Origin: Mizuhopecten yessoensis | Taxonomy: Eukaryota | Length of the DNA: 64,000 nt | Assembly: GCF_002113885.1 (NCBI RefSeq) | Contig: NW_018408920.1 | Location: 591,192 to 655,191, forward strand | Reading direction: 5' to 3' | In this document: positions 23,101 through 62,200 of the stretch, one piece after another | How positions within the stretch are numbered: the stretch's first letter is position 1 | Layout: the number at the start of each line of letters is the position of its first letter | Made by a program: the position numbers and the translations under genes | Notes under the pieces: generated by a model | Told to the model about the DNA's origin: nothing | The model's input: only the letters and a program-made list of their open reading frames with translations | Databases searched by the model: none

Positions 23101-24880
23101 TGCTGGGTACGTGTGTATACGCAGAGACCAGGATATGTAGGAGGTCACTGCTGGGTACCTTCGTGTAAACAGAGACCAGGATATATAGGAGGTTACGGCT
23201 TTGTACGTGTGTATACACAGAGACCAGGATATGTAGGAGGTCACTGCTGGGTACCTTCGTGTAAACAGAGACCAGGATATATAGGAGGTTACGGCTTGGT
23301 ACGTGTGTATACACAGAGACCAGGATATATAGGAAGTCACTGCTGGGTACCTGTGTATACACAGAGACCAGGATATATAGGAGGTCACTGCTGGGTACGT
23401 GTGTATACACAGAGACCAGGATATATAGGAAGTCACTGCTGGGGACGTATGTATACACAGAGACCAGGATATATAGGAGGTCCCTGCTGGGTTCGTGTGT
23501 ATACGTACAGACCAGGATATATAGGAAGTCACTGCTGGGTACGTATGTATACACAGAGACCAGGATATATAGGAGGTCACTGCTGGGTACGTGTGTATAC
23601 ACAGAGACCAGCATATATAGGATATCACTGCTGGATACGTGTGTATACACAGAGACCAGGATATATAGGAGGTCAGTGCTGGGTACGTGTGTATTCACAG
23701 AGACCAGGATATATAGGAGGTCACTGCTGGGTACGTGTGTATACACAGAGACCAGGATATAAAGGAGATCACTGCTGGGTACGTGTGTATACACAGGGAC
23801 CAGGATATATAGGTGGTCACTACCGGGTACGTGTTTTCACATAGACCAGGATATATAGGAGGTCAATGCTGGGTACGTGTGTATACTGAGATACCAGGAT
23901 ATAAAAGATATCAATGCTGGGTACGTGTGTATACACAGAGACCAGGATATATAGGAGATCACTGCTGGGTACGTGTGTATTCACAGAGACCAGGATATAT
24001 AGGAGGTCACTGCTGGGTACGTGTGTACGTGCGTATACACAGAGACCAGGATATATAGGAGGTCAATGATGGGTACGTGTGTATACACACAGACAAGGGT
24101 ATATAGGATGTCACAGCTGGGTACGTGTGTATACACAGAGACCAGGATCTGTAGGAGGTCACTGCTGGGTACGTGCGTATACACAGAGACCAGGATATAT
24201 AGGAGGTCACGGCTGGGTACGTGTGTATACACACAGACCAGGATATATAGGAAGTCACTGCTGGGTATGTTTGTATACACAGAGACCAGGATATATAGGA
24301 GGTCACTGCTGGGTACGTGTGTATACACAGAGACCAGGATATATAGGATATTACTGCTGGGTACGTGTGTATACACAGATACCAGGATATATAGGAGGTC
24401 AGTGCTGGGTACGTGTGTATTCACAGAGACCAGGATATATAGGAGATCACTGTTGGGTACGTGTCTATACACAGAGACCAGGATATATAGGAGATCACCG
24501 CTGGGTACGTGCGTATACACAGAGACCAGGATATATAGGAGGTCACTGCTGGGTACGTGTGTATACACAGAGACCAGGATATATAGGAGGTCGCTGCTGG
24601 GTACGTGCGTATCCACAGAGACCAGGATATATAGGAGGTCCCTGCTGGGTTCGTGTGTATACACACAGACCAGGATATATAGGAAGTCACTGCTGGGTAC
24701 GTATGTATACACAGAGACCAGCATATATAGGATGTCAGTGCTGGGTACGTGTGGATACACAGAGACCAGGATATATAGGAGGTCACTGCTGGGTACGTGT
24801 GTATACACAGAGACCAGCATATATAGGATATCACTGATGGGTACGTGTGTATACACAAAGACAAGGATATATAGGAGATC
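20103..24880. repeat. 48-bp minisatellite with 44-bp variants, ~100 copies
   Basis: Unit acagagaccaggatatataggaggtcactgctgggtacgtgtgtatac; the source of the many overlapping repetitive ORFs in the track. Confidence 0.97.
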
Positions 24881-39035: not shown

Positions 39036-39538
39036 CTGTGGAGGATGGATATTAAATACTACGACGAGATAAATCATTATAAGTCAAGTGAATTTCTAGA
39101 ACTCAAATTCATAGAAAGAGGATAGTACAAGGAATGCCTCTTGCACAAAAATGTGTATCAGAACAACACTGCCATTTAGTCACAGGAAAGATTCAGTCTA
39201 TAAAATCAAATGTCTGCTCACAGGCACTTACCGTTCTAAAAGTCTGACAAATAAATATAATTGCATGTGTCCATGAAATGTAAACAAGCACGAAAGGCAA
39301 AAGAAAGCAAACCGACAAATCGATAAAGATGTCGAAATGTTTGTTCTTCGGGACTAAAATCGGTAAGTTTTTGTGGTCTCTTCAAAGTTTGTAACGATTA
39401 ACGCGTTTCCCTGTCATTAACACCCGAGATATAAAATATACCCAAGAGCAAACGCTATGCACAAGATGGCATGAAATCTTAATATCGTGACGTATACACA
39501 ATTATTGCTCTTCTACCACTGAACATACGGGTTCTTAC

Positions 39539-39698
39539 CACTGATGTAGTAATGTCGGCACGAACAACGAGACAGGACTGCGTTCAGGAAACACTCTGTC
39601 CAGCATGCCACACTGGAATACGTGTGGAACCTCGTGAGACGGTTGGCGTCACTCACTTGATCCACACAATTACCGTGAGGAGGGGGAAGTAATATTTT
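39539..39698 (-). CDS. DEG/ENaC (ASIC-like) channel, exon 4 (KILLPPPHGNC...YSSVACWTECFLNAVLSRCSCRHYYIS)
   Basis: LPPPxGxC and YS..AC...C........C.C motifs; caccag| ... |gtaaga. Confidence 0.93.
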
Positions 39699-40339
39699 CT
39701 GGTGATAGGAAATGATAATCCAATAAACATAAAAAGTGTGATATGAGATTTTTTCACTTAATCTTACTTTATTTGTATACCAAAGTAGGCATCTCATCGT
39801 TGATGTGATATTGTACAAAGTTATATCAGCACTCGGGCCTCCGGCCCCTCGAGCTTGTATGGGAGTCTCGAGCTGATTTACGGAGTAGGAAACGGAAATG
39901 GTAATATGATAACCTCTAAGTATATTTCTGTTCAAATACAATTGGTAGCTACTGATTGATCAAATATGGATTAATTCTATGACTAATATTTTATTGCGTA
40001 AAACTGTTAAAGTAAATTTATTGTCTGTCTCGAATAAAAATATCAAGTTACTTGTATTGTTTTTAAAGATTCTAAAGGTAGAGAATGTTTGTTCACACTG
40101 ACTGTGTTATATAAGGGAATCATTATGGAGAAGGCAGCCTTAAAACGGTCGAGTTAGAACCGGAAGGGCCAATGAGGAGCCAACATTGGGTTTGGAAAAG
40201 TTAGCGAAAGCTCCTAGATCAGAATGTAATACCGTCTATTGGACCGTCAGTAAAGATTTCAACTTAGCCAATAATATAAAATAATACTATTTAAAGTAGT
40301 TCAAGTGTTTGAGCCTTACAATTTCCGTATTCTGCATAT

Positions 40340-41570
40340 TCTATTTGTGAATTAATCTTTCATTTATTCTAATTTGTCAACTACTTTGAGGATTAATCTT
40401 TCTCCTATTCTTCTCTGTGAATTAATCTTTCTCCTATTCTATTTTGTGAATTAGTCTTTCTCCTTTTCTAATTTGTTAATTAATCTTTCCCTTTCCAATT
40501 TTGTGAATTAATCTTTCTCCTATTCTAATTCTGTGAATTAATCTTTCTTCTATTCTACTCTTTCAATTAATCATTTTCTTATGCTACATTGTAGGTTAAT
40601 CTTTCTCCTATTCTATTTTGTGACTTTTCTATTTTGTGAATTAATCTTTTTCCTTTTCTATTTTGTGAGTTTATCTTTTTCCTTTTCTATTTTGTGACTT
40701 AATCTTTCTCCTTTTCTACTTTGTAGATTAATCTTTCTCCTATTCAATTTTGTGACTTAATCTTTCTCCTTTTCGATTTTGTGAATTAATCTTTTTCCTT
40801 TTCTATTTTGTGACTTAATCTTTCTCCTTTTCTACTTTGTGGATTAATCTTTTTCCTATTCTATTTTGTGACAATCTTACTCCTATTCTATTTTGTGAAT
40901 TAATCTTACTCCTATTCTATTTTGTGACTTTTCTATTTTGTGAATTAATCTTTTTCCTTTTCTACTTTGTGGATTAATCTTTTTCCTTTTCTACTTTGTG
41001 AATTAATCTTTTTCCTTTTCTATTTTGTGACTTACTCTTTCTCCTTTTCTACTTTGTGGAGTAATCTTTTTCCTTTTCTCCTTTGTGAATTAATCTTTCT
41101 CCTATTCTATTTTGTGACTTTTCTATTTTGCGAATTATTTTTTCTCCCATTCTTTTTTGTGAATTATTCTTTTCCTTTTCTATTTTTATGACTTAATCTT
41201 TCTCCTTTTTCTACTTTGTAGATTAATCTTTCTCCTATTCTACTTTTTGAATTGATCTTTCTCCTGTTATACTTCTTTTTGAATTAATCTTTGTCCTATT
41301 CTACATTGATCTTTCCTTTATTCTAATTAGTCGATGAATCTTTCTTCTATTTTACCTGGTGAATGAATTTTCTCCTATTCTACTTTGTGAATTGACCTTT
41401 CTCCTATTCTAATTTGTGAATTAATCTTTCTTATTTTCTTCTTTGATAAACAAGCCTTCTTTTTTCTATTATACTTTGTTGTTTAATAGAATATTCCCCT
41501 ACCTTGAGAATGAGGGAGACATTCGGTGAGGGGGAGCGGAATAATCTTTCTCCTATTCTACAATTTGAAT
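40340..41570. repeat. Degenerate ~30-bp pyrimidine-rich minisatellite in intron 3
   Basis: Unit ttgtgaattaatctttctcctattctattt. Confidence 0.9.
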
Positions 41571-41704
41571 TATTTTCTGCAGATTATTCGAGCCTTAATA
41601 TTTTCGTAATAGTTGCTTCTTATGCATGTACATTTAACTTTGTATGGATCGAGACCATCGAATCATGAACGGACTATAACCTTGTCTCTTATATATCGAT
41701 TTAC

Positions 41705-41803
41705 CTTGTTCCTGAAAAGTACGGCTTCTGCTGACAAACCAGGACCCACCAGGAAACTGCGCATTAGCGGGAGCGGTGTCTCCGTCGGCTCATGCAAAAT
41801 TAC
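41705..41803 (-). CDS. DEG/ENaC (ASIC-like) channel, exon 3 (VILHEPTETPLPLMRSFLVGPGLSAEAVLFRNK)
   Basis: GIK|V.LH....P......F.V.PG motif; taaacag| ... |gtaaat; 99 nt. Confidence 0.93.
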
Positions 41804-43002
41804 CTGTTTAAGTTAAAGCAGACAGAAATATTTAGTGTTAGGAATGTACATCACGATTCGTCGCTTTTAAAGTAAGGGAGACTAGTTCTTATATCGCCTT
41901 CAAACATTTAGATAAGTCAAGGCACAAATGTTCCGTTGTACGAGCATTAATCTTTGACTAAACGGTTGAGTTCCCGCTTGTCGCGCCGTTTCTTCGTGCG
42001 CTTGCGATGAAATCGTTTTATTGTAAGGTAGGTCGGATCACAGTTCACCAAAATAATGGACAGTCATTATAATTTTAAGAATTTATTTTTCAGTCATTAT
42101 TATAAAGAGCGTATTAAACTTCCATTCACGCTCTGAAAGAAGTAATTTTTGTAACAAACATGAAACCCATGGTACAGGTAAGGTAATGTGATATTTGCTT
42201 TTTACCGTTATACCTTTCTGAAAGCTGTATTCTTACTAATTTCGTAGTATTTTAGCAGTTAGCAGATAAAGGGAAAATTTAAATGAAGAATAGGGAATCA
42301 AAGGTAAAAAATATGCCATATTCATAAAGTTTGTTCGTGTGAGTGTAAGCAGTATGATTCTGTAGTACGATTGAGACCAGTGCTGAATGACAGACAAACA
42401 TTGTTAATTTCCGATTAAGGTTAATAGTGAGTAACTACGGACATTTCTTTCAACACATGCATAAAACGTGACAGGATGCCCCATACGATCAATCTGACCA
42501 AAATAATATCAACGGCTATCCATTTTGTGCATGTGAACTATCGCATGAAACGATTTTATTCCATTATTTTTTCTAAACCGCAATAAGGATGAACTCGACT
42601 TCCGTGCGCAGATTAGTGTAGAAACAACGGGTAATCCGTCCCATTACTTGTTACAGTCTTACTTGTTGTTTACCCTGGAGACCAGAAATAGCTCTAACAT
42701 ACCAACCTGAAACCCCCACCCCGCCCTCACGCAAACTGTGTGTGTATTAACTTCCTTGTGATATATACATTCCTACCCTTCCATTCCGAAGTAATTTTTC
42801 TGGTGGAAAAAAATTCACCCATCATAGATCATAGCATTGTTTTCCTATTACATAACGAGGCATTTGTTTGTGGCTTTTCCTTGATTTTTCAAGTGTCTTT
42901 TAAAAGTTTTTGGAAAACAACTTGCATAAGCTTGAAGCCTTTATGTTACAGATCAGCAAACAATATATACTTTTCATGTGGCCTTCGCTTTGTCTTACTG
43001 AC

Positions 43003-43543
43003 CTTAATACCTGATTGCAGTGTTTCTGGGAAGAAGTAAAGGTGCTGTTCAATGTCAATGACCACCCGTAGACCCCCTACAGAACCATACATCCGGGACT
43101 TCTGTTGGGGCAATACACCATTAAATGTGAAGCACATTCCCATGGGAGTTATGCTGGCGTCGAAAATATGGCTGCAATTCACTTGACGTCCCTCCCAGAA
43201 ACATGACCGGAATATTTCCAAATTATGTGAATGGGCGCGCATACATTTGTCGATGTCGTCACCGGAAATAGACGTGCCATTGTTCGGACGGTGGATCGGT
43301 AGTTGGGCGTAGTGACTTAACTCGCTTTCGTGAAACATCAGGAATTCCAAGTCTGCACAATCAACAACACTGCTTTTCACTTGGTTTATATTGCATATGG
43401 TGACAGCAGGAAACTCGACATGTTTTCTCTTAGAAACATGAGTGCTCGTACGCGTCTCATACCGGAAGTACATACTCAGTTCGAGATAAGTAAATATTGA
43501 TAGACTTGTAATCATCCCCATAAGCAGAATAATCCACACGCAT
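43003..43543 (-). CDS. DEG/ENaC (ASIC-like) channel, exon 2 (TM1, FPAVTICN, GMCFTFN, GLRVVIDIEQ)
   Basis: Diagnostic family motifs; attttcag| ... |gtcagt. Confidence 0.95.
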
Positions 43544-43708
43544 CTGAAAATTGATAAAGTTATAGACAGCTTTGATTTAAAACAATAAAAGTAAAAGACC
43601 ATAGTGTTACCATATTTCATTTTGTAATTTTGAAGATCTGCAACTGAGATTAATTTAGATATGTATAATTAGTATGGTAAAATGGAGACATGCCAACCAT
43701 ATTAATAC

Positions 43709-45765: not shown

Positions 45766-46434
45766 CAATGGCACCTTCATCAGACAAATGACCAATGCAC
45801 ACAAAGTTGAAAAATGTGTACGAGTTGTCCATATAATCAATGTCGATTTCGGCTACGCTGGAAACGTATGTACAATAGTTGTTATATATGTACCGATATG
45901 ACTCAATTTAGCTACGCTTTGTTAACATTTGGTCATAGATTGCGAGAGTCTTTGAGCCACCTCGTCTCGATTTAGATGGCTTCCTTTATCTGCTGCTTGA
46001 ACAGATTGCTCTCTCTGTCCAAAACTTTGGAGTTATTCCAGTCAATCACATGTTTTTAGCTCACCTGGCCCGAAGGGCCATGTGAGCTTATGCCGTACTG
46101 CGTCGTACGTCGTCCGTCGTCCGTCCATCAACTTTTTCTTTTCAACGACTTCTTCTGAAGAACTGGAGGACCTAAATATACAACATTTGATATAGCGCCC
46201 TATCTAGCTAACATAAGCCACTCTAAAGCGCTTTACAGTACACATATACATCAATTAATTCGTGTATACAAAGCGTAGCTAAATTGAGTCATATCGGTAC
46301 ATATATAACAACTATTGTAAATACGTTTCCAGCGTAGCCGAAGTCGACATCGATTGTACGGACAACTCGTACAGATTTTACAACTTTTGTGTGCATACGC
46401 TTCATTGGTCATTTGTTTGATGAAGGTGACAGTG
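45766..46434. mobile_element. MITE with ~160-bp TIRs and TA flanks, containing a HINE 5' fragment (~46053-46190)
   Basis: 45766-45922 is the inverted copy of 46268-46434; TA|CAATGGCACC ... GGTGACAGTG|TA. Confidence 0.75.
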
Positions 46435-46982
46435 TACATATTGTACTAGTCATCGAAATGTCACATAGATAATGTTATTGGTTGTGTAAAAAGAACTTAT
46501 CAAAGCCCCCGTAATAATAAATCTTTAGAGTAGTAAACACCTTTATCTGGTGACTGCACTCTATAAAGTATCTAGTACTAGGCAAAGACTGATTGTGTCC
46601 AATCTATTTAAACTGATAACTGTAAGTAACTGATTATTTACCATGGATACTCCACAGAGAATCGTTATAAATCACGGTAGGATTTCACCTTCAATACTGA
46701 AGATCAACATCATCTTTTAAAAAGACATTTATTTCATACCGAAACCAGCACTTCGTGTCGAAGCGCATTTGCAGTGGATTCCGATTAATGCGTGAACCCT
46801 GTAAACTTTGAACCCCCATACAGTTTTATTCCATTCGATTCCATGACCTTTTTGACAATTTATTTAGCGTTAACCCAGTATATATGTACTTTTCTAACCG
46901 TATCATTGGATCTTGTGCGAAGAAAAAGCGTTCAACGAACAACTTCTTAAAACTAAGTATACATGAAAAAGTTGTCATCAAG

Positions 46983-48794
46983 ATGGAATATTTCATCGAA
47001 TTGAATAATAATACTTACATTGGAATTGTATTCTTTGTATTTGTGAGTTTCGTTTCATCTATGCCTTGTCCAACGGGTTGTATGTGCCCAAGCACCTTGG
47101 CGGTTGGTTGCAGTACAGGATTCACGGCGTTTCCGTCACCACTGACCAATACTATCAAATGACTCTCAATTAATGGAAACTACATGACACACAACAGTAC
47201 CCCTACCTTACATCGGAGTGACTTTCAATCCATGCCTGTACTAGTTTCGTTACAAATGGCTCATTGCGAAATTAACACAATCGCAGATGACACATTCTTA
47301 TCACGTGGTTCGTTGAACTATCTAGATCTGTCATATAACAACATTCCCCGTATAACTGACAAGACCTTTTTGGGGCTAACAAATCTGGTTTCCCTACAGA
47401 TCAGCGGGAATCCGCATTGTGAGCTGAGCGAGAAGACTTTTGATAGTCTTTCGAATCTGCAAGAACTCTATATTGCCGAAATGGACTTGGAACGCCTTCT
47501 TCCTGTTATGTTCACAAATTTGAAACATCTCAGACTTTTGGATGTCCATGGAAACAAAATATGGAAAATTGAATTTGATTTTGGGGCTGTATTCCCGAAC
47601 TTACAACACTTGGATTTATCGAGAAACCTTCTAAAGGGACTGCCCAAACGGTACAACGACACGTTTTCACATCTAACGACCGTCAAAATGTCGGGAAATC
47701 CTCTCCAATGTAATTGCGAAATACGATGGTTAAAGCATTCAACGAAAAAGGCTCTGGACCCTGAATATGCCAGTGACGCATTAGTTTGCTACGGCCCAGA
47801 ACGTCTGAAATATGCTCCGATTTTGCGCGTTCCTGATTTAGAGTTTAAGTGTGTTGCACCCCAAATAGTCAATTGTACAACTGAAACGTACGTTGTGATG
47901 GAAACGTCATCCCTTCGGATGTGGTGTGAATTGGGGGGATATCCATATCCGGATGTGACCTGGACAAGATATGATGGAAAGAATGTAGAATTCACTTACG
48001 AAAACACTTCAAACTACTATGTTTCTAGAACAGGATCCTTGGACATTTTCAACGTCTCAAAGGCCGATGACGGTACGTGGACACTCGGTGCCAGCAATTC
48101 AATCGGTCAGAAAAGTCATCAACTGAAAATAGTTGTTACCCCCAAAACAACCACCACCACAACAACGTCAACAATAACAACAACAACAACAACCACAACC
48201 ACAACCACAACCACGCCGACGACGACAACAACAACATCGACAACAACGCCTACACCAACCACATCGACAACAACGCCGACGACGACAACGACAACATCAA
48301 CAACAACGCCGACAACATCAACGCCGACAACAACCACATCAACAACGCCGCCACAGACTACACCAACTACAAGTACTTTGAAATCTACAACCGCAAATAC
48401 GATAGTAAGCAGCAGCGAGCATCAGTCAGCTAATGGGGGTACGGTAATCCATAAAGCCCCCGATCATGTAAACCCTAACCCGGCAAACATCACACCAGCT
48501 GACAATGACAAGACAGACGACGATAGCGATGAGGACAAACCAACTAATAGGACGAAAATGGAAGACGAAGACGGTGGTGGAATGAACATGATGATGATAG
48601 CAGGAGCTGGCGGAGGAGGTCTACTTGTAATCGTCCTCATCGCCGTCATCGTCTACTGCGTGAAGAGTAAGACTAACAGGTCGACAACAGGAATAATGAC
48701 AACGCTTGGAGGCAGGAAATCTAGAACAAGTGCATGGGATAGAACAATCCATGGGATAGAACAAGTGCATGGGATAGAAAAATCGATGGGATAG
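46983..48794 (+). CDS. LRR-Ig membrane receptor, copy 1 (signal peptide, LRRNT, LRRs, LRRCT, Ig, Thr-rich stalk, TM); in-frame TGA at codon 60, so possibly a pseudogene or null allele
   Basis: CPTGCMC LRRNT, LxxLDLSxN repeats, NPLQCNC LRRCT, C-x-x-x-G-x-P-x-P-x-V-x-W Ig motif, TM GLLVIVLIAVIVYC. The ORFs 46884-47162 and 47184-48794 are in the same frame, separated by TGA at 47160-47162. Confidence 0.85.
48147..48350 (+). repeat. Coding (ACN)n repeat forming a poly-Thr mucin-like stalk
   Basis: aca/acc/acg runs translating to TTTTTT-P-TTTT. Confidence 0.9.
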
Positions 48795-48878
48795 AACAAG
48801 TGCATGGGATAGTACAAGTGCACGGGATAGAACAAGTGCATGGGATAGAACAAGTGCATGGGATAGAACAATCCATGG
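48723..48878 (+). repeat. 18/17-bp VNTR at the 3' end of LRR-Ig copy 1
   Basis: agaacaagtgcatgggat (18 nt) and agaacaatccatgggat (17 nt) units in the order 18,17,18,17,18,18,18,18,partial. Confidence 0.9.
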
Positions 48879-49131
48879 CAACACAAATAGGGCTGGTGTT
48901 ACGACGGTTGACAAAGGTAAGAAAAACAACGCTGCCAACAATACAGATAAGAACGGGACAGTGACAGAAGATTCAATAGGAGACATATTAGCTATTGTAT
49001 CAGTTGTTGTTGTAGGAAGCTTGTTACTGATCACTGCCGTGATCTCTGTTATCGTCTGCTGTGTTAAATGGAAGAACATCCGCATCAATGTTCATTCGGA
49101 TCAAGCCAATCACTTTTCAGCGCGATTCTAA
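48865..49131 (+). pseudogene. Out-of-frame second stalk + TM + short tail of LRR-Ig copy 1
   Basis: RTIHGNTNRAGVTTVDKGKKNNAANNTDKNGTVTEDSIGDILAIVSVVVVGSLLLITAVISVIVCCVKWKNIRINVHSDQANHFSARF*. The first half is homologous to the end of copy 3 (KGKENNAVNNKIGTVTGD). Confidence 0.7.
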
Positions 49132-51293
49132 ATGAACCTTTCATTAACTATTCATGCAGAAATTCCAACGGTGGTTGTGGTAATATATTAGTTCATTTTA
49201 AATGTTACTTTAGTATATGTATAAACGGCATATTAAATTAAGATATAAGTGACAGTAGTCCTTTTATACAGAATTTGTGGAGAATTATAAACAATATTCG
49301 CAGACATTCATTTTTATAACGAGAATACGAACAGCAGCGAAAAACTGATAAACAGCTGAACAATCGAAAATATTATAATAATACCAGGTATTTCAAAGTG
49401 TCGATTCGCTTGGAATAACAAGATGAATAATTAAATCAAGACAAACATTATGAACCTCGACAAGAGATTGGAGTAGAAACAAAGTGCTAAGGAAGGCTTG
49501 TAGTCCCCTGTATCACTTGTAGCTCTCGTCAAATTGTTTCACATCTAACCAGGAAAGTGTAAAGTCATCAATAATGTATCATTTACATGTCTTAACTAAT
49601 TCCTTTACCGTAATAGAAACTGATATCTAAATATTGTAAATACCTGATACTTTTGTATGCAATTCATGCCAGTTAAATGCAAAAGTTATATATGTCAGAT
49701 GACTCTATTAATATTGTACTTTATAACGGTATAACCAACACATAGTGTCCGCGGCTGCTGCACCCTATGTGCGCACGACTAAGGGTGGTCCATCATTCAC
49801 GCAGAGTCGCTGACTGTGTGGTACTGCAGTGTGACCACTGCAGAATATTGTATGAACCCCGACTTCTGCTGTTAGAAGATTTTGTCCTTTTTTTTCAAAT
49901 TGTGTATTTTTTATCTATAGTGTACATATATTTACGTACATGTATCAATAAGTAAACAACTATGTATCATACATAAATCAGTCCGTTTTACTCATTGCAT
50001 TGGTCATCCAGTTTATGACGCATAATACTTTGTGTATTTTTTCCGTCTACTGCAAGCTCGTGCACGGGTATACTGGTTGTTAAAATACCATATAGTAGAC
50101 CGGAGTGCAAGCATTCCAATCAAATGTGTATCAATGTTGTATTACAATATTTAAAGATTAGTATGGTTACTACACCCTATCAATATTCTAATACATATGT
50201 GCAGCTACAAGACTGCACACATAAATGTGCTATAAAGATTACAAATGTTGTGGCTTTTACGCTATCCATACTGTGTAATACATATACCAGTATATACATG
50301 TAGCTATAAGGTTACAGTTAATAAAATGTATGCCATAATAATTTATATATACCTTACAAATTATCTTACTTGTAATAGTATACTCATCACCAGAGACATA
50401 TAGTATTTAATATAAAAGTTGCCACATCTAGTGTGCACACATACGTGCAGAAGGTAAAAATGTTATGGTACACATACAATAATTTGGGTAATAGGTATTG
50501 TTACAATATATATTTATACAGAAGGAGTCGTTATCATATGCATTGCATTAACATGTCAAGTGCCACAATTATATTCTCCCAAATCTCCATGTGTGTTACC
50601 CACCTGGCTCACCTGTGCTGGTGAAATCGAACGAAGTCAATATAAAATACCCAACATGCATCTATTCGTAGTAAGTAGAGAGTGTGCATGTAGACTCCAT
50701 GGCTGTTAAGTTTAAAGTGTACAGTCAACTGCTTGCAGATTTGTATATATTCTACAACAAAGCAAACTGTGTGTTACGTAGTTATTTTTATCATTACTAT
50801 TTAATTTACATGTATGATGCCAGCACTATCTGTATATACCGATTTATAACTGTATGAATGTCCAATAGTTTGTATATTTAAAAACGGTATGACTACCAAT
50901 CTTTATTCCTCATCAATGTGAATTGCATCTAAATATGGTTGCTGGTTTTGACTCAATGTCACCCACCTCCCTCGTTGGCATTCTAATTACAACTCATTGA
51001 GAAGTTCAATTTATTAATATCCAGTGATAACGTAACTTATTCATGTTTATTCTACGTACGTACCTCGGCTTGATATATCCATCATATCCACTCCAACGAA
51101 ATTAAAATGTAAAATTGATTCTATCCAAATCGTACAGTGTGTGACCCCGTGTTTAACTTTATCGAGTGGATACACGTGAAAAGTCTCGTGTTATTGCTAG
51201 CATTTATTGTACCTGACTAGCGCTTCTGAACCATAAATACTTAACTTTTCTTATACAGAACCATTATGGTCAGGTCTGTTTATATATCGGCGC

Positions 51294-54271: not shown

Positions 54272-54985
54272 AAGATATCTTATATAGCATATGAGATATC
54301 TTATATACTATATAAGATATTTTATATCGTATACAAGATATCTCATATAGTATATGAGATATCTTATATAGTATATGACATATCTTATATAATATATAAT
54401 ATATAAGATATCTTATATACTATATGAGATATAGAAATTAAATGAGATGCTATATAAGATATCTTATATGATATAAAAGATATCTTATATCTTATAATAT
54501 CGTATATAAGATATCTTATATAATATATAAGATATCTCATATAGCTATATGAGATATCTTACATAATTAAAGTCTCGTTACGAAATAAGATATCTTAAAT
54601 AGGAACGAGATTTTAACAAAATGTCGAAAATGAAGTCTCCCCGTACGGAATATCTCGAGGATCTACGTAGGGACAGTAGGCTTGTTGTAACAACACGTGT
54701 TCCTGTCGCCGCCATTATGTCTGAGCCACTTCAAGAGTGCGGGAAATGGCAGCCTCTGCTTTGGCTGCTATAAGAGAGACAAGGCGAGCTTGGCCTAGGG
54801 AAAATACAGCATCCGTACCATCCCTCTCCGCCATTGCGCCCAATGCAATCCTGAATGTGCACCGAATGATTCTCGAGGGAGAAATTAGTTTCTAGTTTTT
54901 AATGCCACGAAATCTCATTCTATATCAGATATCTTATATAGCAACGATATTTCAATTATATAAGATATCTCATATAGCTATGCTA
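54272..54985. repeat. AT-rich AGATATCT-palindrome array around a GC-richer core; probable non-autonomous element
   Basis: tataagatatcttata units at 54272-54600 and again at 54920-54980. The core contains cgccgccatt and ccgccatt. Confidence 0.7.
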
Positions 54986-54988
54986 CAG

Positions 54989-55633
54989 CTATCAAATTGC
55001 TCTCAATTAATGGAAACTACCTGACACACAACAGTATCTCTACCTTACATCGGAGTGACTTTCAATCCATCCCCAGACTAGTTTCGTAACAAATGGCTCA
55101 TTGTGAAATTCAAACAATTGCAGATGACACATTTTTATCACGTGGTTCGTTGACATATCTAGATCTGTCATATAACAACATTCCCCGTATAACTGACCAG
55201 AGATTTTTGGGGCAAACAAATCTGGTTTCCCTACATATCAGCGGGAATCCGCATTGTGATCTGAGTGAGAAGACTTTTGGAAGTCTTTCGAATCTGCAAG
55301 AACTCTTTATTGCTGAAATGGACTTGGAACGCCTTATTCCTGTTATGTTCACAAATTTGAAACATCTCAGACTTTTGGATGACCATGGAAACAAAATACG
55401 GAAAATTGAATTTGATTTTGGCGCTGTATTCCTAAACTTACAACACTTGGATTTATCGAGAAACATTCTCAAGAGACTGCCCAAATGGTACAACGACACG
55501 TTCTCACATCTCACTACCGTCAAAATGTCGGGAAATGCTCTCCAATGTAATTGCAAATTACGATGGTTAAAACATTCAACGAAAAAAGCTCTAGACCCTG
55601 AATATGCCAGTGGCGCATTAGTTTGCTACGGCC
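54989..55633 (+). pseudogene. LRR-Ig copy 2, pseudogene truncated at both ends (LRR-LRRCT only)
   Basis: Colinear with copies 1 and 3 from IKLLSINGNY to LVCYG; TAA at 55087-55089 where the paralogs have TTA; no signal peptide, Ig or TM. Confidence 0.9.
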
Positions 55634-57108
55634 TAGGGTATCATATTCGATGTGCTAAACACTAGCTGTATCACTTTATTAATATTCACTGGGAAAATAT
55701 TCTTGCTACTAAGGGGGATGCAATATCGTATCGTTTAATATCAAAGTATGGAAAACATGGTATTGTATTCGATGCGCTAATATGATTCCACTTTCATCAA
55801 TACTTTGAATGACTTTAACATGACACATTTTAATCTGCATTCTGTGGAAGTGAAAATTAGAGGTGGCCAATTTTTTATAATTCAGTGTTGACGTCATTCC
55901 GCTTTCGGTTTACTTCCATTGCAAATATATGCACCATGATTTAGCAGGAATGTCATTTTTTGCTAAGGGTTCCAAATCCGAGATTGTGCCAAAATTGTTC
56001 CGTCATTTAAATTGCAGGGACACAATGCATTTAAATAATAAAACATAAAATTAACCGCGACAGTATATATTTTTATTTTTGTATTGTTTTAGGTTGTACT
56101 GAAATTAGTAAGGCCCTAAATTAATAATACTTAACAATAAGTATTATCGCAATATATACATTTTTCTGACCTGTACATTGACATTGATCCAACGTTCATG
56201 CAGATATATATGTAAATATTCCATAATTTGTTTCGATAGTATATATACAAAGAAAGTATGTGCTTCTGGTGGTGTCATAACCTTATCAATTGCTGAACTG
56301 AAATATAGTCTTCCCCGGTGAATCTCTAACAAGGTGAAAGTACCAGGGAAGTATTTAAAACTCTTATGTCGGTTTTTTTTTTATTATATCTAACCATTTC
56401 AAAGAATTTTTATAGGTTTTTTTCTCATTTCAATTTCATATATTTGTATATATAAAAAGTATTTATTCAAACTTTTGAATTTTTTGATCAAATTTCCTTC
56501 AAAACTCCTGACCCTCGTTCAAATGACGACATCATAGCCAGAATTATTTTATATACATTACTTTTTGTACAACACAAAATCTGCAGGCCAGAGACCAGAA
56601 TCTGGCATCATAAATAAGGAAGTATCATGAAATAGTGTATCCTTATTAATTTGATTTTAATAGGATCCATTACATGTATCATTTTTTGGTACATTTTATG
56701 AACATTTGTTAAGATTCGGGGTACGGATAAAAAGGAGTGTACGTATTTATCATATTCAACATACCTCCCATGTTGCACCAAATGTATGACATGTCACCCT
56801 GTACACAATGGCTGACATACAGAAATAGCGACGTTATCATTTTATTCCTGCTGTAGCCTGATTTAATGGGTCGAGGAGGTCTGCATACCTCGGACGCACG
56901 CGACTGAGTAATTTGTATGCGCCAATAAATGATCGTAGGCCCTGTGCAGCAGGGGGTTCGGTAGACGATAAGACAGCCACCTTGTGAGGGCTTAAATATA
57001 TTTTGGAATTTTGCTTCGCGTATATTGCGTGCTGTTTCTTTTTATCATTATCAACACCACAGAAAATATACAGATTCGAGAAATCAGAAGGATTTATAGC
57101 GAATAGAT

Positions 57109-58443
57109 ATGGAACAAAACAGGTATACTACCATGGAAATTACGTTTTTGATATTAGTGCTTTTTGTATTACCTGGGAATAGTCATACGCCTTTGTCTTG
57201 TCCAACGAGTTGTGTGTGCCAAAGCACCTTTGCGGTTCGTTGTAGTGCAGGATTCACGGCGTTTCCGTCACCACTGACCGATTCCATCAAATTGCTCTCA
57301 ATTAATGGAAACTACATGACACACAACAGTATCCCTACCATACATCGGAGTGACTTTCAATCCATGCCTGGACTAGTTTCGTTACAAATGGCTCATTGCG
57401 AAATTAACACAATCGCAGATGACACATTCTTATCACGTGGTTCGTTGAACTATCTAGATCTGTCATATAACAACATTCCCCGAATAACTGACAAGACATT
57501 TTTAGGGCTAACAAATCTGGTTTCCCTACAGATCAGCGGGAATCCGCATTGTGAGCTGAGCGAGAAGACTTTTGATAGTATTTCGAATCTGCAAGAACTC
57601 TATATTGCCGAAATGGACTTGGAACGCCTTCCTTCTGTTATGTTCACAAATTTGAACCATCTCAGACTTTTGGATGTCCATGGAAACAAAATATGGAAAA
57701 TTGAATTTGATTTTGGGGCTGTATTCCCGAACTTACAACACTTGGATTTATCGAGAAACCTTCTAAAGGGACTGCCCAAACGGTACAACGACACGTTTTC
57801 ACATCTCACTACAGTCAAAATGTCTGAAAATCCTCTCCAATGTAATTGCGAATTACGATGGTTAAAGCATTCAACGAAAAAGGCTCTGGACCCTGAATAT
57901 GCCAGTGACGCATTAGTTTGCTACGGCCCAGAACGTCTGAAATATGCTCCGATTTTGCGCGTTCCTGATTTAGAGTTTAAGTGTGTTGCACCCCAAATAG
58001 TCAATTGTACAACTGAAACGTACGTTGTGATGGAAACGTCATCCCTTCGGATGTGGTGTGAATTGGGGGGAGATCCATATCCGGATGTGACCTGGACAAG
58101 ATATGATGGAAAGAATGTAGAATTCACTTACGAAAACACTTCAAACTACTATGTTTCTAGAACAGGATCCTTGGACATTTTCAACGTCTCAAAGGCCGAT
58201 GACGGTACGTGGACACTCGGTGTCAGCAATACAGATGGCCAGAACAGTCACCAACTGATAGTTTTCGTTACTCCATACACTTCAACACCGACGGCACAAG
58301 GGCAAATGAAGACAGCAGAAACGTTGACGACTAACAGGTCGACAACAGGAATAATGACAACGCTTAGTGGTAAGAAAGGTAAGGAAAACAACGCTGTCAA
58401 CAATAAGATTGGGACAGTGACGGGAGATTATGAAACACCATAG
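57109..58443 (+). CDS. LRR-Ig protein copy 3, 444 aa: signal peptide + LRR + LRRCT + Ig, no TM (predicted secreted)
   Basis: Intact ORF; hydrophobic N-terminus ITFLILVLFVLPGNS; CPTSCVC LRRNT; core nearly identical to copy 1. Confidence 0.9.
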   Translation: MEQNRYTTMEITFLILVLFVLPGNSHTPLSCPTSCVCQSTFAVRCSAGFTAFPSPLTDSIKLLSINGNYMTHNSIPTIHRSDFQSMPGLVSLQMAHCEINTIADDTFLSRGSLNYLDLSYNNIPRITDKTFLGLTNLVSLQISGNPHCELSEKTFDSISNLQELYIAEMDLERLPSVMFTNLNHLRLLDVHGNKIWKIEFDFGAVFPNLQHLDLSRNLLKGLPKRYNDTFSHLTTVKMSENPLQCNCELRWLKHSTKKALDPEYASDALVCYGPERLKYAPILRVPDLEFKCVAPQIVNCTTETYVVMETSSLRMWCELGGDPYPDVTWTRYDGKNVEFTYENTSNYYVSRTGSLDIFNVSKADDGTWTLGVSNTDGQNSHQLIVFVTPYTSTPTAQGQMKTAETLTTNRSTTGIMTTLSGKKGKENNAVNNKIGTVTGDYETP

Positions 58444-58474
58444 CTGTCACATATGGCATAAAAATACTATGTGA

Positions 58475-59050
58475 ATTGATTTTTTCATTATATTATATGA
58501 TTTCATCAATATATTATTCGATTTTATCATTATTTTATTTGTTTTCATCATTATGTGATTTGATTTTATCATTATATTATATGATTTTACCATTTAATTT
58601 ATGTTATATGATTTCATCAATATATTATTTGATATCAGCAATATATGATTTTAATTTTTCATTATATGATTTGGTTTCCATTGTATTGTAAGTTTTCATC
58701 ATATATATTGTTTGATTTTATCATCATATGATTTGATGTTATCGTTATTTGATTTGGTTTCACCATTATATTATACGCTGTTGTCATTATATGATTTTGT
58801 TGTGTAGTTATATTATTCGATTTCATCAATATATGATTGAACTTAATGGTTATATCATTTAGTTTCAACATCATATTATATGCTTTCGTCATTATATGAT
58901 TTAGTGTAATCGTTATATTATTCGATATTTTATCAGTATACCATTCCGTAATCATATTATTAACAAACATCATGAATAAACATACCGTTATATGATTGCA
59001 CAATTTCATTATATAATTGTACAACTTCATTTTACGTTGGATACGATTCT
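58475..59050. repeat. Degenerate AT-rich short-period (7/21-bp) array
   Basis: Recurrent ttatatgatt / ttcatca / tatatta. Confidence 0.75.
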
Positions 59051-59299: not shown

Positions 59300-62200
59300 G
59301 CTTTTAAGGATATAACAGACAACACGAGGTAAGAACACTACAATTCCAACACAAACAATAACAGCTACACTAATATCGCTATCACTTCTTCTCTTCTGGG
59401 TCACAAACAAGTCGAACATTTTCCACAATCATAGGACACAAATACACAACAACACATTCGGTTTCGACGAAAACAGACTCGCCCAACATGAAAAACACGA
59501 CACACCACTCACACTATTCCCCGCAATATCCACACGTCTCAAACACAAATACACAAAACCAAGCAACTCTTACATCTTTATCTTCATACTCGCAATATCA
59601 TCAGACACTGAACTTAACCCAGGGCCCAGAGCACTCAAATACCCATGCGGAACATGCAACAAAGCCGTCACATGGCAAACAAATACATCTCACAACAGCT
59701 TCCAGAATTAGAAACAGATAACGAATCCATTTGGGCCAACATCAAAATGTCAAACTCACACAACTTCATAGTAGGTGCATACTACAGACCACCATCAGAT
59801 AAAGGACATTCATTCACAGAACTCGAAATATCACTGAACAGAATAGGAACACAGAACAACACAATAACATTTATTAGCGGAGACTTCAACCTCCCACACA
59901 TAGATTGGTCAAACAACACCACAACACCAGGCAAACCAGACAAAACCCTGCACCAACGCCTTCTAGACATCATCGACGACAACTCCCTCACCCAAACCAT
60001 AGACAAACCCACAAGAGGAGAACACATCCTTTACCTAACATTCACAAATCGTACATCCCTCATCAATAAACAAGAAATAGTCCCACCGATAGGCAAGGCA
60101 GATCACGACATCATATATACAGAAGCAGACATTAGTCTACAAAAAACACGCAAACCACCTCGGAACATTAACCTATATAACAAAGCAAACAGGGACAACA
60201 TCAGAAAAGACCTCACTAATATAAATAACAACTTTCAGGACCTAGAACATCAAAACACAGAAAACCTCTGGGTAAGTTTCAAAACAACACTCTAAACATC
60301 TACAGAAAAAAACATTCCAATAAAATCACTAGCATACAAACACAGACTACCCTGGATGAACAACTCACTTCGCCGCCTCTCAAACAAGTCTAAACGCCTC
60401 CACCAAAAATCAAGGAAAACCACAAACTTATCCACACATACAAAACAGTAAAAGCTGATTGCAAAAACAAACCCGCAATGCATACCTACAATACATTGAG
60501 AAGATAATTACCTACCTACTTCTCGTCTATCAAAACCACAAAAAAAGAAAACACAGACATCATAGCATTACGTAAAAACGGCCACCTCACAGAAACAAAG
60601 GCAAACATACTAAATGAACAATTCCAAGAAGCCTTCACACTAGAACAAAACACAACAATACCTGACAAAGGAATATCAGCTCATCCACTCATGCCAGATA
60701 TACACATAACATGCCAAGTCGACAAACTACTATATAGCATTAACCCACACAATGCAACAGGCCCAGACCATATACACGGCAGAATACTGAAAGAACGCAA
60801 AGATATCACAGCACCAATACCAACAAAAATATTCTAAACATCATTCAACACAGGAACATTATCCAGTGACTGGAAACACGCCAACGTAAACCCTATACAA
60901 AGAAAGAGACAAATACAACCCAACAAACTACAGATCAATATCACTCACATGCATCGCATGCAAACTCCTAGAACACATCATCACAAGCGCAACCATGAAA
61001 CACTTAGAAGACAACAAAATACTGCATGACCTACGACATGGCTTTCATACATCAAGATCTTGCGAAACACAACTCATTACATTCATACAAGACCTCACAC
61101 AGAACCACAACAACAACAAACAAACAGACATGATCATAATGGACTTTGCCAAAGCCTTCGACAAAGTCCCACAAAAACACCTACAGTACAAACTAAATTA
61201 GTACGGCATCACCGGAACCATACTAACATGGATAACAGACTTCCTATCGCAACGCACCCCAACAGTAGTACTTGAGGGCAAACACTCCGACAAAATACCA
61301 GTAACATCTGGAGTGCCTCAGGGAACCTTTTTGGGACCAGTCCTCTTCCTCATATACATCAACGACTTCCCAGAATACATATCACACAGTACACTAAGAC
61401 TTTTTGCAGACGACAGTATACTATACAAAACAATTAACAACAAAGACGAAACGACAAAACTACAAACAGATTTAGATGCAGCTAGTAAATGGGAAGAGGA
61501 CTGGTTCCACCCAGACAAATGCACCATACTCACTATATCACCAAAACGCACAAACATTAAACACCAATACACACTCCATGACCACACACTAGTATATGTA
61601 ACTTCAAACAAATACCTAGGCATTACACTTCAAAACAACTAAAAAATGGGACAAACACATTAAAAACATCAAATCAAATGCAAATAAATCACTATGCTTT
61701 CTGAAACGCACGCAACCTAAAATTAAAATTCACCACACATACAAAACATGCATGCAAGACCATTGTAAGACCAAATCTCAAATACTGCTCTTCAGTTTGG
61801 GGCCCACATTATACAAATAACATAAATCAATGAGAACAAGTACAATGAAGAGCAGCAAGATATGTCCTAAAAAAATACCATACCACAAGCTCAGTCACAG
61901 ATATGATACACAACTTGCAATGGCCAACACTACACACACGCAGAACAAGAACACGCATTATTCTTCTCTACAAAATTATACACCAACAAGTTGCAATACA
62001 CACCAACAATCTCATCCCGTCAGACACCAGAACACGTCAAGGACACTACCTTAGTTACAGACATAATTATCCACACATCCAAAGACACATACAGACACTC
62101 ATTCTTTCCATACACCATCATACAGTGGAACCTCCTACCCAAAACAATAATCCTATCAGAAACACCAGCAGAATTCAGGACATGCACATAATCCAACATA

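What the first reader, a model, noticed from the sequence alone, without database searches (positions are those of the whole stretch)
48590..49131. Two transmembrane tails in tandem, separated by a VNTR that sets the reading frame
Seen: after TM1 the frame enters 18-nt units (RTSAWD). Two 17-nt units shift it and create the TAG at 48792-48794. In the original RTSAWD frame the sequence continues into a stop-free second stalk with N-glycosylation sequons, a second TM (ILAIVSVVVVGSLLLITAVISVIVCC) and a basic tail ending at 49131. With zero or three 17-nt units the ORF would read through. Copy 3 joins Ig almost directly to the TNRSTTGIMTTL stalk, so the mucin+TM1 block looks like a swapped-in module. 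A GTAAGA donor-like site sits at that junction (~48667). Inference: repeat-number variation or splicing could toggle receptor topology or tail, a phase-variation-like diversification in an invertebrate LRR-Ig family. A passive relic of recombination is equally possible.
Basis: partly seen in the sequence, partly recalled or inferred. Interest (0 to 1): 0.7.

Follow-up and report, generated by a model that had tools for sequence, protein, structure and literature searches.

The report
Chimeric, broken scallop LRR-Ig receptor copy
The two membrane anchors in a row come from a fusion of two neighbouring scallop receptor genes in a copy that is already broken upstream, so the repeat that shifts the frame looks like decay, not a switch.

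Summary
TM1 (48591-48659) is followed by a 9-unit repeat at 48722-48881. Its two 17-nt units put TAG 48792 in frame. The other frame runs stop-free through a stalk and TM2 (48985-49062) to the stop at 49129-49131.

The genome is Mizuhopecten yessoensis. This copy is a chimera. Up to 48672 it matches a single-pass LRR-Ig-mucin-TM1 gene, which is intact 211 kb away and sits next to the same ASC channel gene in three other scallops. From 48671 it matches the stalk of copy 3. The "GTAAGA" is a G>T change beside that 2-nt breakpoint.

The copy also has an in-frame TGA at 47160, seen in a second individual, and a foreign 5' end. The frameshifting units are 35-nt duplications.

Other individuals carry the same TM1 joined to the normal tail, so the fusion is probably polymorphic. 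One contig of unknown kind shows a 2-unit, in-frame TM1-to-TM2 form, but all its 31-mers also occur in the long allele. No RNA evidence was obtained.

Verdict: a recent recombination relic in a birth-and-death gene cluster. A frame toggle is not supported and not fully excluded.

The parts
46983..47058 (+). Start codon and hydrophobic N-terminus of copy 1 (MEYFIELNNNTYIGIVFFVFVSFVSS). It is unrelated to the signal peptide and upstream DNA shared by copy 3, the intact paralog and the Ylistrum orthologue.
   Evidence: Homology to the paralogs starts at 47059. 46503-47058 is single-copy.
47059..48142 (+). LRRNT-LRR-LRRCT-Ig body of copy 1. It is 96.5% identical to the intact paralog L012 and 95.8% identical to copy 3.
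   Evidence: Pfam LRR_8, LRR_4, I-set and Ig_3. BLAST.
47160..47162 (+). In-frame TGA. Copy 2, copy 3 and L012 have TTG (Leu) here.
   Evidence: Run X11's contig 46866-47192 shows no difference at this codon.
48143..48590 (+). Thr/Pro-rich mucin stalk and acidic juxtamembrane segment, Y-type. It is 91% identical to L012 and absent from copy 3.
48591..48659 (+). TM1, the Y-type anchor. Orthologous anchors are followed by a CVKRK... tail in L012, Ylistrum and Pecten maximus.
   Evidence: best 19-residue Kyte-Doolittle mean 2.61.
48667..48673 (+). Chimeric breakpoint. The sequence is Y-type through 48672, with one G>T at 48668 that creates GTAAGA. It is X-type (copy-3 stalk) from 48671. There is a 2-nt GA overlap and the reading frame of both parents is kept.
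   Evidence: The junction is spanned without mismatch by an independent contig in run X18.
48671..48721 (+). X-type stalk, part 1 (TNRSTTGIMTTLGGRKS, sequon NRS at 48675). It is 92% identical to copy 3 at 58329-58377.
48722..48881 (+). Minisatellite arranged as (18+17)(18+17)(18)(18)(18)(18+17-like terminal). It is absent from copy 3 and from the rest of the genome.
48792..48794 (+). TAG that ends the annotated ORF after two -1 shifts.
   Evidence: The annotated model P0002 ends here.
48882..48984 (+). X-type stalk, part 2, in frame mod 1, with sequons NNT and NGT. 48913-48973 is 80% identical to copy 3 at 58375-58429.
48985..49062 (+). TM2, the X-type anchor.
   Evidence: Kyte-Doolittle mean 2.94. 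It resembles the TM of Argopecten P0006.
49063..49131 (+). Short tail VKWKNIRINVHSDQANHFSARF plus the TAA stop. The CVKWKN motif is shared with the tail of Argopecten P0006.
54989..55636 (+). Copy 2, an LRR-only fragment with an internal TAA.
57109..58443 (+). Copy 3: signal peptide, LRR, Ig, 20-residue linker, X-type stalk, then a stop. It has no TM. Homology to copy 1 ends just before TM2, and a 21-nt satellite follows.

Best explanation
Copy 1 (46983-49131) is a recently formed, decaying chimera in a tandem cluster of scallop LRR-Ig receptor genes.

A single-pass 'Y-type' gene (LRR, Ig, mucin stalk, TM1, short CVKRKK... tail) lost its cytoplasmic tail. At a non-homologous breakpoint with 2 nt of microhomology (48671-48673) it was joined to the 3' part of an 'X-type' paralog: an extracellular stalk with N-glycosylation sequons, TM2 and a CVKWKN... 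tail. The likeliest mechanism is a deletion or a replication template switch between neighbouring paralogs (inferred). The two anchors in tandem are a by-product of that join, not a designed topology.

In the reference haplotype the copy cannot make a receptor, for three reasons. It has a TGA at 47160. Its signal-peptide region is replaced. The stalk minisatellite has grown by two 35-nt (18+17) and three 18-nt duplications (124 nt in all), which throw the frame onto TAG 48792.

What is shown: the anatomy, the parentage of each block, the breakpoint, the stop codons, and the existence of the unfused form in other individuals.

What is inferred: the mechanism and direction of the rearrangement, its recency, and the lack of function.
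For: - Block parentage. 47059-48672 matches the intact paralog L012/P0001 (596-aa open frame, single TM, tail KRKKGSNRVEDIS...). 48671-48719 and 48913-48973 match the copy 3 stalk.
- Synteny. An ASC channel gene on the minus strand is followed by a Y-type single-TM LRR-Ig gene in Argopecten, Pecten maximus and Ylistrum. The window has the same layout. All orthologues have one TM.
- TM2 origin. TM2 and CVKWKN resemble the genuine TM and tail of Argopecten's second tandem copy P0006: 43% over 35 aa, pairwise E 5e-6. The sequons lie upstream of TM2, as expected for a former ectodomain stalk.
- Lesions. TGA 47160 is in the reference and in X11's contig. The 5' end is unrelated to the paralogs. The 17-nt units copy the terminal unit, so the expansion went in 35-nt steps that are not multiples of 3.
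- The junction is real. An X18 contig spans it with 0 mismatches. Runs from three studies hold 0.83-0.89 of the sampled words.
- An unfused form exists. X14 (1645-nt contig) and X18 carry copy-1-type TM1 sequence with 1 mismatch in 265 nt. Reference L012 differs there by 11 substitutions and a 9-nt indel. These contigs continue into the Y-type tail.
- Context. Copy 2, copy 3 and Argopecten's third copy are also broken.
- In a survey of LRR_Ig/FN3 proteins, 0 of 87 were multi-pass (PMC2235866).
Against: - The TM2 frame is still open over 82 codons (p about 0.003-0.007). It shows only one synonymous difference in two other individuals. It is therefore either very young as a relic or still constrained.
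- The breakpoint keeps both parental frames. That has a 1-in-3 chance, so it is weak evidence.
- One X18 contig gives a 2-unit repeat that reads TM1 through to TM2 in frame.
- Expression was not tested. The only raw RNA run laid no reads at all, on the conserved LRR part either, so it is no test.
- It is unknown whether TGA 47160 is on every haplotype.
Confidence: 0.72

Rival explanations
1. The fusion is a functional, segregating allele. Germline length variation of the minisatellite decides whether the product ends shortly after TM1 (a single-pass receptor with a novel short tail) or reads on through the stalk and TM2 (a two-pass or re-anchored form). This would add allelic diversity to an immune-type receptor family.
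For: - The X18 contig 48638-48721|48846-49084 skips 124 nt and is open from TM1 to TM2.
- No X18 contig covers any of the 121 loop-specific 31-mers.
- Word shares are bimodal across individuals: 0.83-0.89 versus 0.63-0.77. The difference matches the size of the junction and repeat part.
- The TM2 frame is conserved and open.
- The junction is in frame.
Against: - TGA 47160 lies upstream in the reference and in X11.
- The N-terminus is replaced.
- Every 31-mer of the short form also exists in the long allele. A low-depth (about 5x) de Bruijn contig can therefore produce it by collapse.
- In the read-through form the glycosylation-sequon stalk would lie in the cytoplasm and the tail outside.
- No multi-pass member is known in this class.
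- No RNA evidence was obtained.
Confidence: 0.12
2. Alternative splicing chooses the anchor. The GTAAGA at 48667, or the AAG|GTAAGA at 48916, acts as a donor, so transcripts use TM1 or TM2.
For: - Donor-like motifs are present at 48667 and 48916-48921.
- Several GT..AG pairs would join frame 0 to the TM2 frame.
Against: - The 48667 motif is a single G>T change from the parental GGAAGA at a recombination breakpoint.
- Of the 48 frame-compatible pairs, the best-ranked have purine-rich acceptor regions: at most 6 of 12 pyrimidines.
- The paralogs code LRR through tail in one uninterrupted ORF.
- The only joint seen has TA..GA ends and lies inside the repeat.
Confidence: 0.04
3. The tandem-TM arrangement is an assembly artefact that stitched two paralogs or haplotypes together.
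For: - The assembly is fragmented (82,659 contigs).
- The paralogs are 95-96% identical.
- Some individuals lack the junction words.
Against: - An independent 2019 run (X18) has a contig crossing 48638-48721 with no mismatch. It includes copy-1-specific TM1 variants, the T at 48668 and the X-type stalk.
- Runs of 2022 and 2025 from other studies hold as many words as the presumed source run.
Confidence: 0.03

Closest known systems
LRR_Ig/FN3 class of extracellular LRR type I receptors (LRFN/SALM, LRRC4/NGL, AMIGO, LINGO; Dolan et al. 2007, PMC2235866). NCBI names the scallop paralogs 'LRR and fibronectin type III domain-containing protein 1-like'.
   Same: LRRNT, LRR, LRRCT, one I-set Ig domain, a stalk, a single TM and a short tail, as seen in the intact paralog P0001 and the orthologues P0003 and P0005.
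   Different: - No FN3 domain was detected, so it is not an LRFN in the strict sense.
- It has a long Thr/Pro mucin stalk plus an acidic segment.
- Copy 1 carries a second anchor. The survey found 0 of 87 multi-pass members.
Hybrid or chimeric genes and pseudogenes made by recombination between tandem paralogs. Examples from general knowledge are CYP21A1P/CYP21A2 chimeras, glycophorin A/B hybrids and red/green opsin hybrids.
   Same: - Two neighbouring paralogs contribute the 5' and 3' parts of one copy.
- The parental unfused form still exists in the population.
- The cluster shows birth-and-death decay.
   Different: The join is not at homologous positions. It links the TM1 end to the stalk start with a 2-nt overlap. 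It therefore adds a second stalk and TM instead of swapping equivalent parts, which points to end-joining or template switching rather than unequal crossing-over (inference).
Contingency loci and phase variation by repeat-length change in an ORF (bacterial simple-sequence contingency genes), and coding minisatellites such as mucin VNTRs (general knowledge).
   Same: A tandem repeat inside a coding region whose copy composition decides the downstream frame. The repeat region varies between individuals.
   Different: - The main unit is 18 nt and frame-neutral. Only the 17/35-nt variant units shift the frame.
- The ORF is already interrupted upstream.
- No switching between states has been shown.
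- No somatic or high-rate mechanism is evident.

Membership tests
LRR_Ig/FN3 type I receptors | Extracellular LRR block with N- and C-terminal caps | tested here: met
   PF13855 LRR_8 at E 7e-24 to 8e-26, and LRR_4. CPTGC...C and NPLQCNC cap motifs are in the translation.
LRR_Ig/FN3 type I receptors | Ig domain after the LRRs | tested here: met
   PF07679 I-set at E 6.5e-10 and PF13927 Ig_3.
LRR_Ig/FN3 type I receptors | Single membrane anchor (type I or GPI) | tested here: not met
   Copy 1 has two hydrophobic anchors in series. The paralog P0001 and the orthologues P0003, P0005 and P0006 have one. The survey found 0 of 87 multi-TM members.
LRFN/SALM subfamily (the name given by NCBI) | Fibronectin type III domain between Ig and TM | tested here: not met
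   No PF00041 hit at E<=0.01 in copy 1 or copy 3. A mucin stalk occupies that position.
Pseudogene (non-functional gene copy) | Premature stop or frameshift relative to intact paralogs | tested here: met
   TGA 47160-47162 where the paralogs have TTG. Two -1 shifts lead to TAG 48792.
Pseudogene (non-functional gene copy) | The lesions are real and not private to the assembly | tested here: inconclusive
   TGA is unchanged in X11's contig 46866-47192. X14 gave no piece over the codon. The repeat is unresolved in the DNA contigs.
Pseudogene (non-functional gene copy) | No productive expression | tested here: inconclusive
   Raw RNA run X23 laid 0 reads on 3.3 kb, which is no test. X18 is only guessed to be RNA.
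Pseudogene (non-functional gene copy) | Relaxed selective constraint (dN/dS near 1) | not tested
   Only one variable site, synonymous, at 49011 in the TM2 segment. That is too few sites.
Chimeric (hybrid) gene from paralog recombination | The 5' and 3' parts each have a different closest paralog, with a definable breakpoint | tested here: met
   Y-type to 48672 and X-type from 48671.
Chimeric (hybrid) gene from paralog recombination | A parental (unfused) arrangement is demonstrable | tested here: met
   X14 and X18 contigs have copy-1-type TM1 continuing into the Y-type tail. The orthologues are single-TM.
Repeat-mediated phase or contingency switch | Repeat tract in the ORF whose length changes alter the frame | tested here: met
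   The 17-nt and 35-nt units are not multiples of 3.
Repeat-mediated phase or contingency switch | Alleles or cells with different repeat states, including in-frame ones | tested here: inconclusive
   The in-frame 2-unit contig in X18 could be a k=31 collapse, since it has 0 novel 31-mers. Word shares are bimodal.
Repeat-mediated phase or contingency switch | An otherwise intact gene, so that the switch has a phenotype | tested here: not met
   Upstream TGA and replaced N-terminus in the reference. TGA is also in X11.
Alternative-splice cassette | Consensus donor and acceptor pairs, and RNA joints | tested here: not met
   The best frame-compatible acceptors have at most 6 of 12 pyrimidines. 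No GT-AG joint was seen, but RNA coverage was absent.

The most novel reading that the evidence does not exclude
The Y-X fusion is a young, segregating structural allele of a scallop LRR-Ig receptor. On some haplotypes it has an intact 5' end and the short in-frame repeat. It then encodes a receptor with two membrane spans or a swapped anchor and tail. Minisatellite length polymorphism would decide between the truncated single-pass form and the read-through form. That would be germline, population-level diversification of receptor topology.
Probability: 0.08. Interest if true: 0.6.

Novelty: new member of a known kind. Interest (0 to 1): 0.25.

Why it matters
As read here, this is a tidy example of how tandem receptor clusters in bivalves turn over. 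It shows a non-homologous fusion of two paralogs, caught while the parental form still seems to segregate, followed by quick decay: a nonsense codon and a minisatellite expansion in steps that break the frame.

It also warns annotators. The database model for this copy starts at an internal Met, removes the mucin region with a modelled intron that has no support here, and ends at the repeat-induced stop.

It would matter more only if intact in-frame fusion alleles exist. Those would be an unusual two-anchor LRR-Ig protein and a case of repeat-length-dependent receptor architecture in an invertebrate.

Tried and rejected
- The global MAFFT alignment of copy 1 against copy 3 misplaced the blocks. 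I replaced it with local BLAST.
- The TM2 piece (48793-49128) gave nothing useful in any search:
  - no Pfam hit;
  - nothing in the word-index protein search;
  - nothing else in the own genome by DNA or protein;
  - only a spurious hit to an unrelated repeat protein, from 8 short stretches added up, among 1.84 billion representatives.
- A C-terminal region search with Argopecten P0006 found only itself.
- The weak DNA hits of the repeat on contig C532 are a different 15-nt satellite.
- No TM2 remnant lies downstream of copy 3. The score is no better than shuffles.
- No displaced Y-type tail or 3' flank lies anywhere in the window.
- The splice-toggle enumeration gave no credible acceptor.
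- Raw RNA run X23 laid no reads, so it tests nothing.
- Looking up the annotated model P0002 by exact sequence found no record.
- My 97% likeness cut-off may have hidden short divergent contigs. Zero depth over 48673-48848 in X11 and X14 is therefore weak evidence.
The two ORF pieces were searched apart. The X18 short form was rebuilt from reference coordinates only inside a local script, to test its 31-mers and its frame.
Full report
**1. The observation**

- The long ORF 47184-48794 ends with TM1, MMIAGAGGGGLLVIVLIAVIVYC (48591-48659), followed by VKSKTNRSTTGIMTTLGGRKS.
- It then enters a minisatellite (TRF period 18, 8.4 copies, score 244). The units start at 48722, 48740, 48757, 48775, 48792, 48810, 48828, 48846 and 48864.
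- The second and fourth units are 17 nt. Each shifts the frame by -1, from RTSAWD to EQVHGI to the TAG frame, so the ORF stops at 48792-48794.
- In the frame where units 5-8 read RTSAWD, the sequence runs on without a stop. It passes through RTIHGNTNRAGVTTVDKGKKNNAANNTDKNGTVTEDSIGD (sequons NNT at 48937 and NGT at 48952), then TM2 ILAIVSVVVVGSLLLITAVISVIVCC (48985-49062) and VKWKNIRINVHSDQANHFSARF, to TAA 49129-49131.
- The 82 codons after the repeat stay open in 0.3% of shuffles and in 0.7% of same-length frames in the adjacent intergenic DNA. TM2 is real coding sequence.

**2.

- The same copy starts at ATG 46983 and has an in-frame TGA at 47160-47162. Copy 2, copy 3 and the intact paralog all have TTG at that codon.
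- Upstream of 47059, copy 1 is unrelated to the signal peptide and promoter region that copy 3 and the distant paralog share. The Ylistrum orthologue shares the signal peptide too.
- The database model for this copy (P0002, 420 aa) starts at an internal Met downstream of the TGA. It skips the mucin region with a modelled intron that has no support here, and it ends at TAG 48792.

**3. Organism and family**

Protein names identify the genome as Mizuhopecten yessoensis. The window is contig C5593:591192-655191 of a 988-Mb assembly.

The proteins carry LRR_8/LRR_4 repeats and one I-set Ig domain, with no FN3 hit. Only four close copies exist in the genome:
- copy 1;
- copy 2, an LRR fragment at 54989-55636 with a TAA;
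- copy 3 at 57109-58443;
- L012/P0001, 211 kb downstream on the same contig.

L012/P0001 is intact: 593 aa in the database model, with signal peptide, LRR, Ig, mucin stalk, acidic segment, TM1 and the tail KRKKGSNRVEDISIRQDNDFDSVRSPRRHRVNDF.

**4. Block parentage and breakpoint**

- Copy 1 at 47059-48142 is 96.5% identical to L012 and 95.8% to copy 3. The LRR-Ig body is homogenised among copies.
- 48143-48672 (mucin, acidic segment, TM1) is 91% identical to L012 and has no counterpart in copy 3.
- 48671-48719 and 48913-48973 match the short stalk of copy 3, at 92% and 80%.
- Aligned base by base, copy 1 follows the Y-type sequence through 48672 with one substitution. Parental GGAAGA becomes GTAAGA at 48668.
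- It follows the X-type stalk from 48671. That leaves a 2-nt overlap and keeps both parental frames.
- The donor-like GTAAGA is therefore a point change beside a recombination breakpoint.

**5. Which arrangement is ancestral**

In Argopecten, Pecten maximus and Ylistrum, an ASC (DEG/ENaC) channel gene on the minus strand is followed by an LRR-Ig gene on the plus strand. The window has the same layout, with ASC exons at 39513-43620.

- The Pecten maximus and Ylistrum genes have one TM followed by a CVKRK... tail. The Argopecten gene P0007 also has a single anchor, but its model stops just after it.
- Argopecten's second tandem copy, P0006, has a short stalk and a TM followed by CVKWKNSTVSV.... 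This aligns with TM2 and its tail at 43% over 35 aa, pairwise E 5e-6.
- This similarity is not significant database-wide, so I call it suggestive.
- Together with the sequons upstream of TM2, it fits TM2 being the native anchor of an X-type paralog.
- Copy 3 keeps the X-type stalk but loses homology just before TM2. A 21-nt satellite follows, and no TM2 remnant lies downstream.
- TM2 and about 620 nt of its 3' flank are single-copy in the genome.

**6. Population evidence (one read-laying run; run list)**

- *The junction is real.* A 323-nt contig in X18 (2019, a different study) covers 48638-48721 without a mismatch. Runs from three studies hold 0.83-0.89 of the sampled words.
- *TGA 47160 recurs.* It is unchanged in X11's contig 46866-47192.
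- *An unfused form exists.* X14's 1645-nt contig matches 48408-48672 with one mismatch and no gap. Reference L012 differs from copy 1 there by 11 substitutions and a 9-nt indel. The contig then continues into the Y-type tail. X18 has the same join in a 52-nt contig. So a copy-1-type gene with the normal tail exists in other individuals, and the fusion is probably a structural polymorphism.
- *Word shares support this.* They fall into two groups, 0.83-0.89 and 0.63-0.77. The gap matches the size of the junction and repeat part.
- *The DNA contigs cannot count repeat units.* In X11 and X14 they break at 48849, the exit of the only repeated 33-nt node.
- *The short form.* The X18 contig jumps from 48721 to 48846, skipping 124 nt (units 1-7). 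This form reads in frame from TM1 through the stalk into TM2.
- *Why the short form is not proof.* All 293 of its 31-mers also occur in the long allele. A contig at depth about 5 can arise by graph collapse. Against collapse, X18 has no contig on any of the 121 loop-specific 31-mers. I leave this at about even odds.
- *Kind of run.* X18 is only guessed to be RNA.
- *No expression test.* The one raw RNA run (X23) laid no read on the whole 3.3 kb, so expression remains untested.

**7. The repeat itself**

The 17-nt units are copies of the terminal unit, which reads RTIHG in the TM2 frame. The array is (18+17)(18+17)(18)(18)(18)(18+17). That is a minimal 18+17 core expanded by two 35-nt and three 18-nt duplications, 124 nt in all.

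Growth in 35-nt steps breaks the frame and would be selected against in a working gene. The unit occurs nowhere else in the genome. The weak hits on contig C532 are a different 15-nt satellite.

**8. Splicing**

I enumerated all GT..AG pairs that would carry the TM1 frame into the TM2 frame without a stop. There are 48, and the best-ranked of them have at most 6 of 12 pyrimidines before the AG. The paralogs code everything in one exon. The only joint seen has TA..GA ends inside the repeat.

**9. Verdict**

The best reading is a chimeric copy made by a non-homologous join between a Y-type and an X-type paralog. The fusion probably still segregates against the unfused form, and the reference haplotype is already dead: TGA, a foreign 5' end and an out-of-frame repeat expansion.

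The two anchors are a by-product of the join. In a read-through protein the glycosylation stalk would be cytoplasmic. In the survey of Dolan et al. (PMC2235866), no LRR_Ig/FN3 protein was multi-pass (0 of 87).

The surrounding cluster shows the same birth-and-death pattern: copy 2, copy 3 and Argopecten's third copy are all broken.

I put 0.72 on this reading, 0.12 on a functional length-polymorphic fusion allele, 0.04 on a splice choice and 0.03 on an assembly artefact. The remainder is unassigned.

**10. Limits**

- Expression and repeat genotypes could not be measured. The run search and the read-laying run are capped at one each.
- My 97% likeness cut-off may have hidden short divergent contigs.
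- The ORF pieces were searched apart.

Noticed in passing
window 39513-43620 (-): Exons of an amiloride-sensitive sodium channel (ASC, DEG/ENaC) gene, PF00858 at E 3e-27. The pairing of ASC on the minus strand with an LRR-Ig gene on the plus strand is conserved in Argopecten, Pecten maximus and Ylistrum.
   Followed up: partly
window 54989-55636: Copy 2 is an LRR-only fragment, 92% identical to copy 1, with an internal TAA. It has TTG, not TGA, at the codon broken in copy 1. It is preceded by a 21-nt satellite at 54273-54565.
   Followed up: partly
window 58430-58940: Copy 3 loses homology to copy 1 just before the TM2 position and stops at 58441-58443. An AT-rich 21-nt satellite follows at 58476-58940. 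As it stands, copy 3 encodes an anchorless (secreted or dead) LRR-Ig protein.
   Followed up: partly
window 59645-60295 (+): ORF with an endonuclease-reverse transcriptase domain (PF14529, E 5e-12). It is a LINE-like retroelement fragment just downstream of copy 3.
   Followed up: partly
window 46300-46502: A dispersed repeat of about 200 nt. The first look found more than 2000 candidates in the genome, and the scored copies are 88-97% identical (most 91-94%). It is SINE- or MITE-like and ends about 480 nt upstream of copy 1's ATG.
   Followed up: partly
window 4397-14833 and 20103-24877: Large satellite arrays: a 41-nt unit with about 84+15+15+69 copies, and a 48-nt unit with about 100 copies. 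The 48-nt array produces many long spurious ORFs on both strands.
   Followed up: no
L041:14393-15980 (Argopecten, CM084270.1): A third tandem LRR-Ig copy downstream of P0006. It is frameshifted in several places and has extra sequence splitting its TM and CVKWKN tail. It is another decayed X-type copy. A Gypsy-like retrotransposon lies between P0007 and P0006.
   Followed up: partly
window 47232-48794 (database model P0002): The deposited protein model for copy 1 begins at an internal Met after the TGA. It removes the mucin-coding region with a modelled intron that has no support here, and it ends at the repeat-induced TAG. It is named LRFN4 although no FN3 domain is detectable.
   Followed up: partly
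window 49756-49800: A dispersed repeat begins here (10 genome matches). Run X14's contig departs from the reference at 49759, which may be an insertion polymorphism.
   Followed up: no
L002:1628-1636 (intact paralog tail): The Y-type tail also contains a TCG|GTAAGA donor-like motif inside its ORF. Such motifs recur in this purine-rich coding sequence without evidence of use.
   Followed up: no
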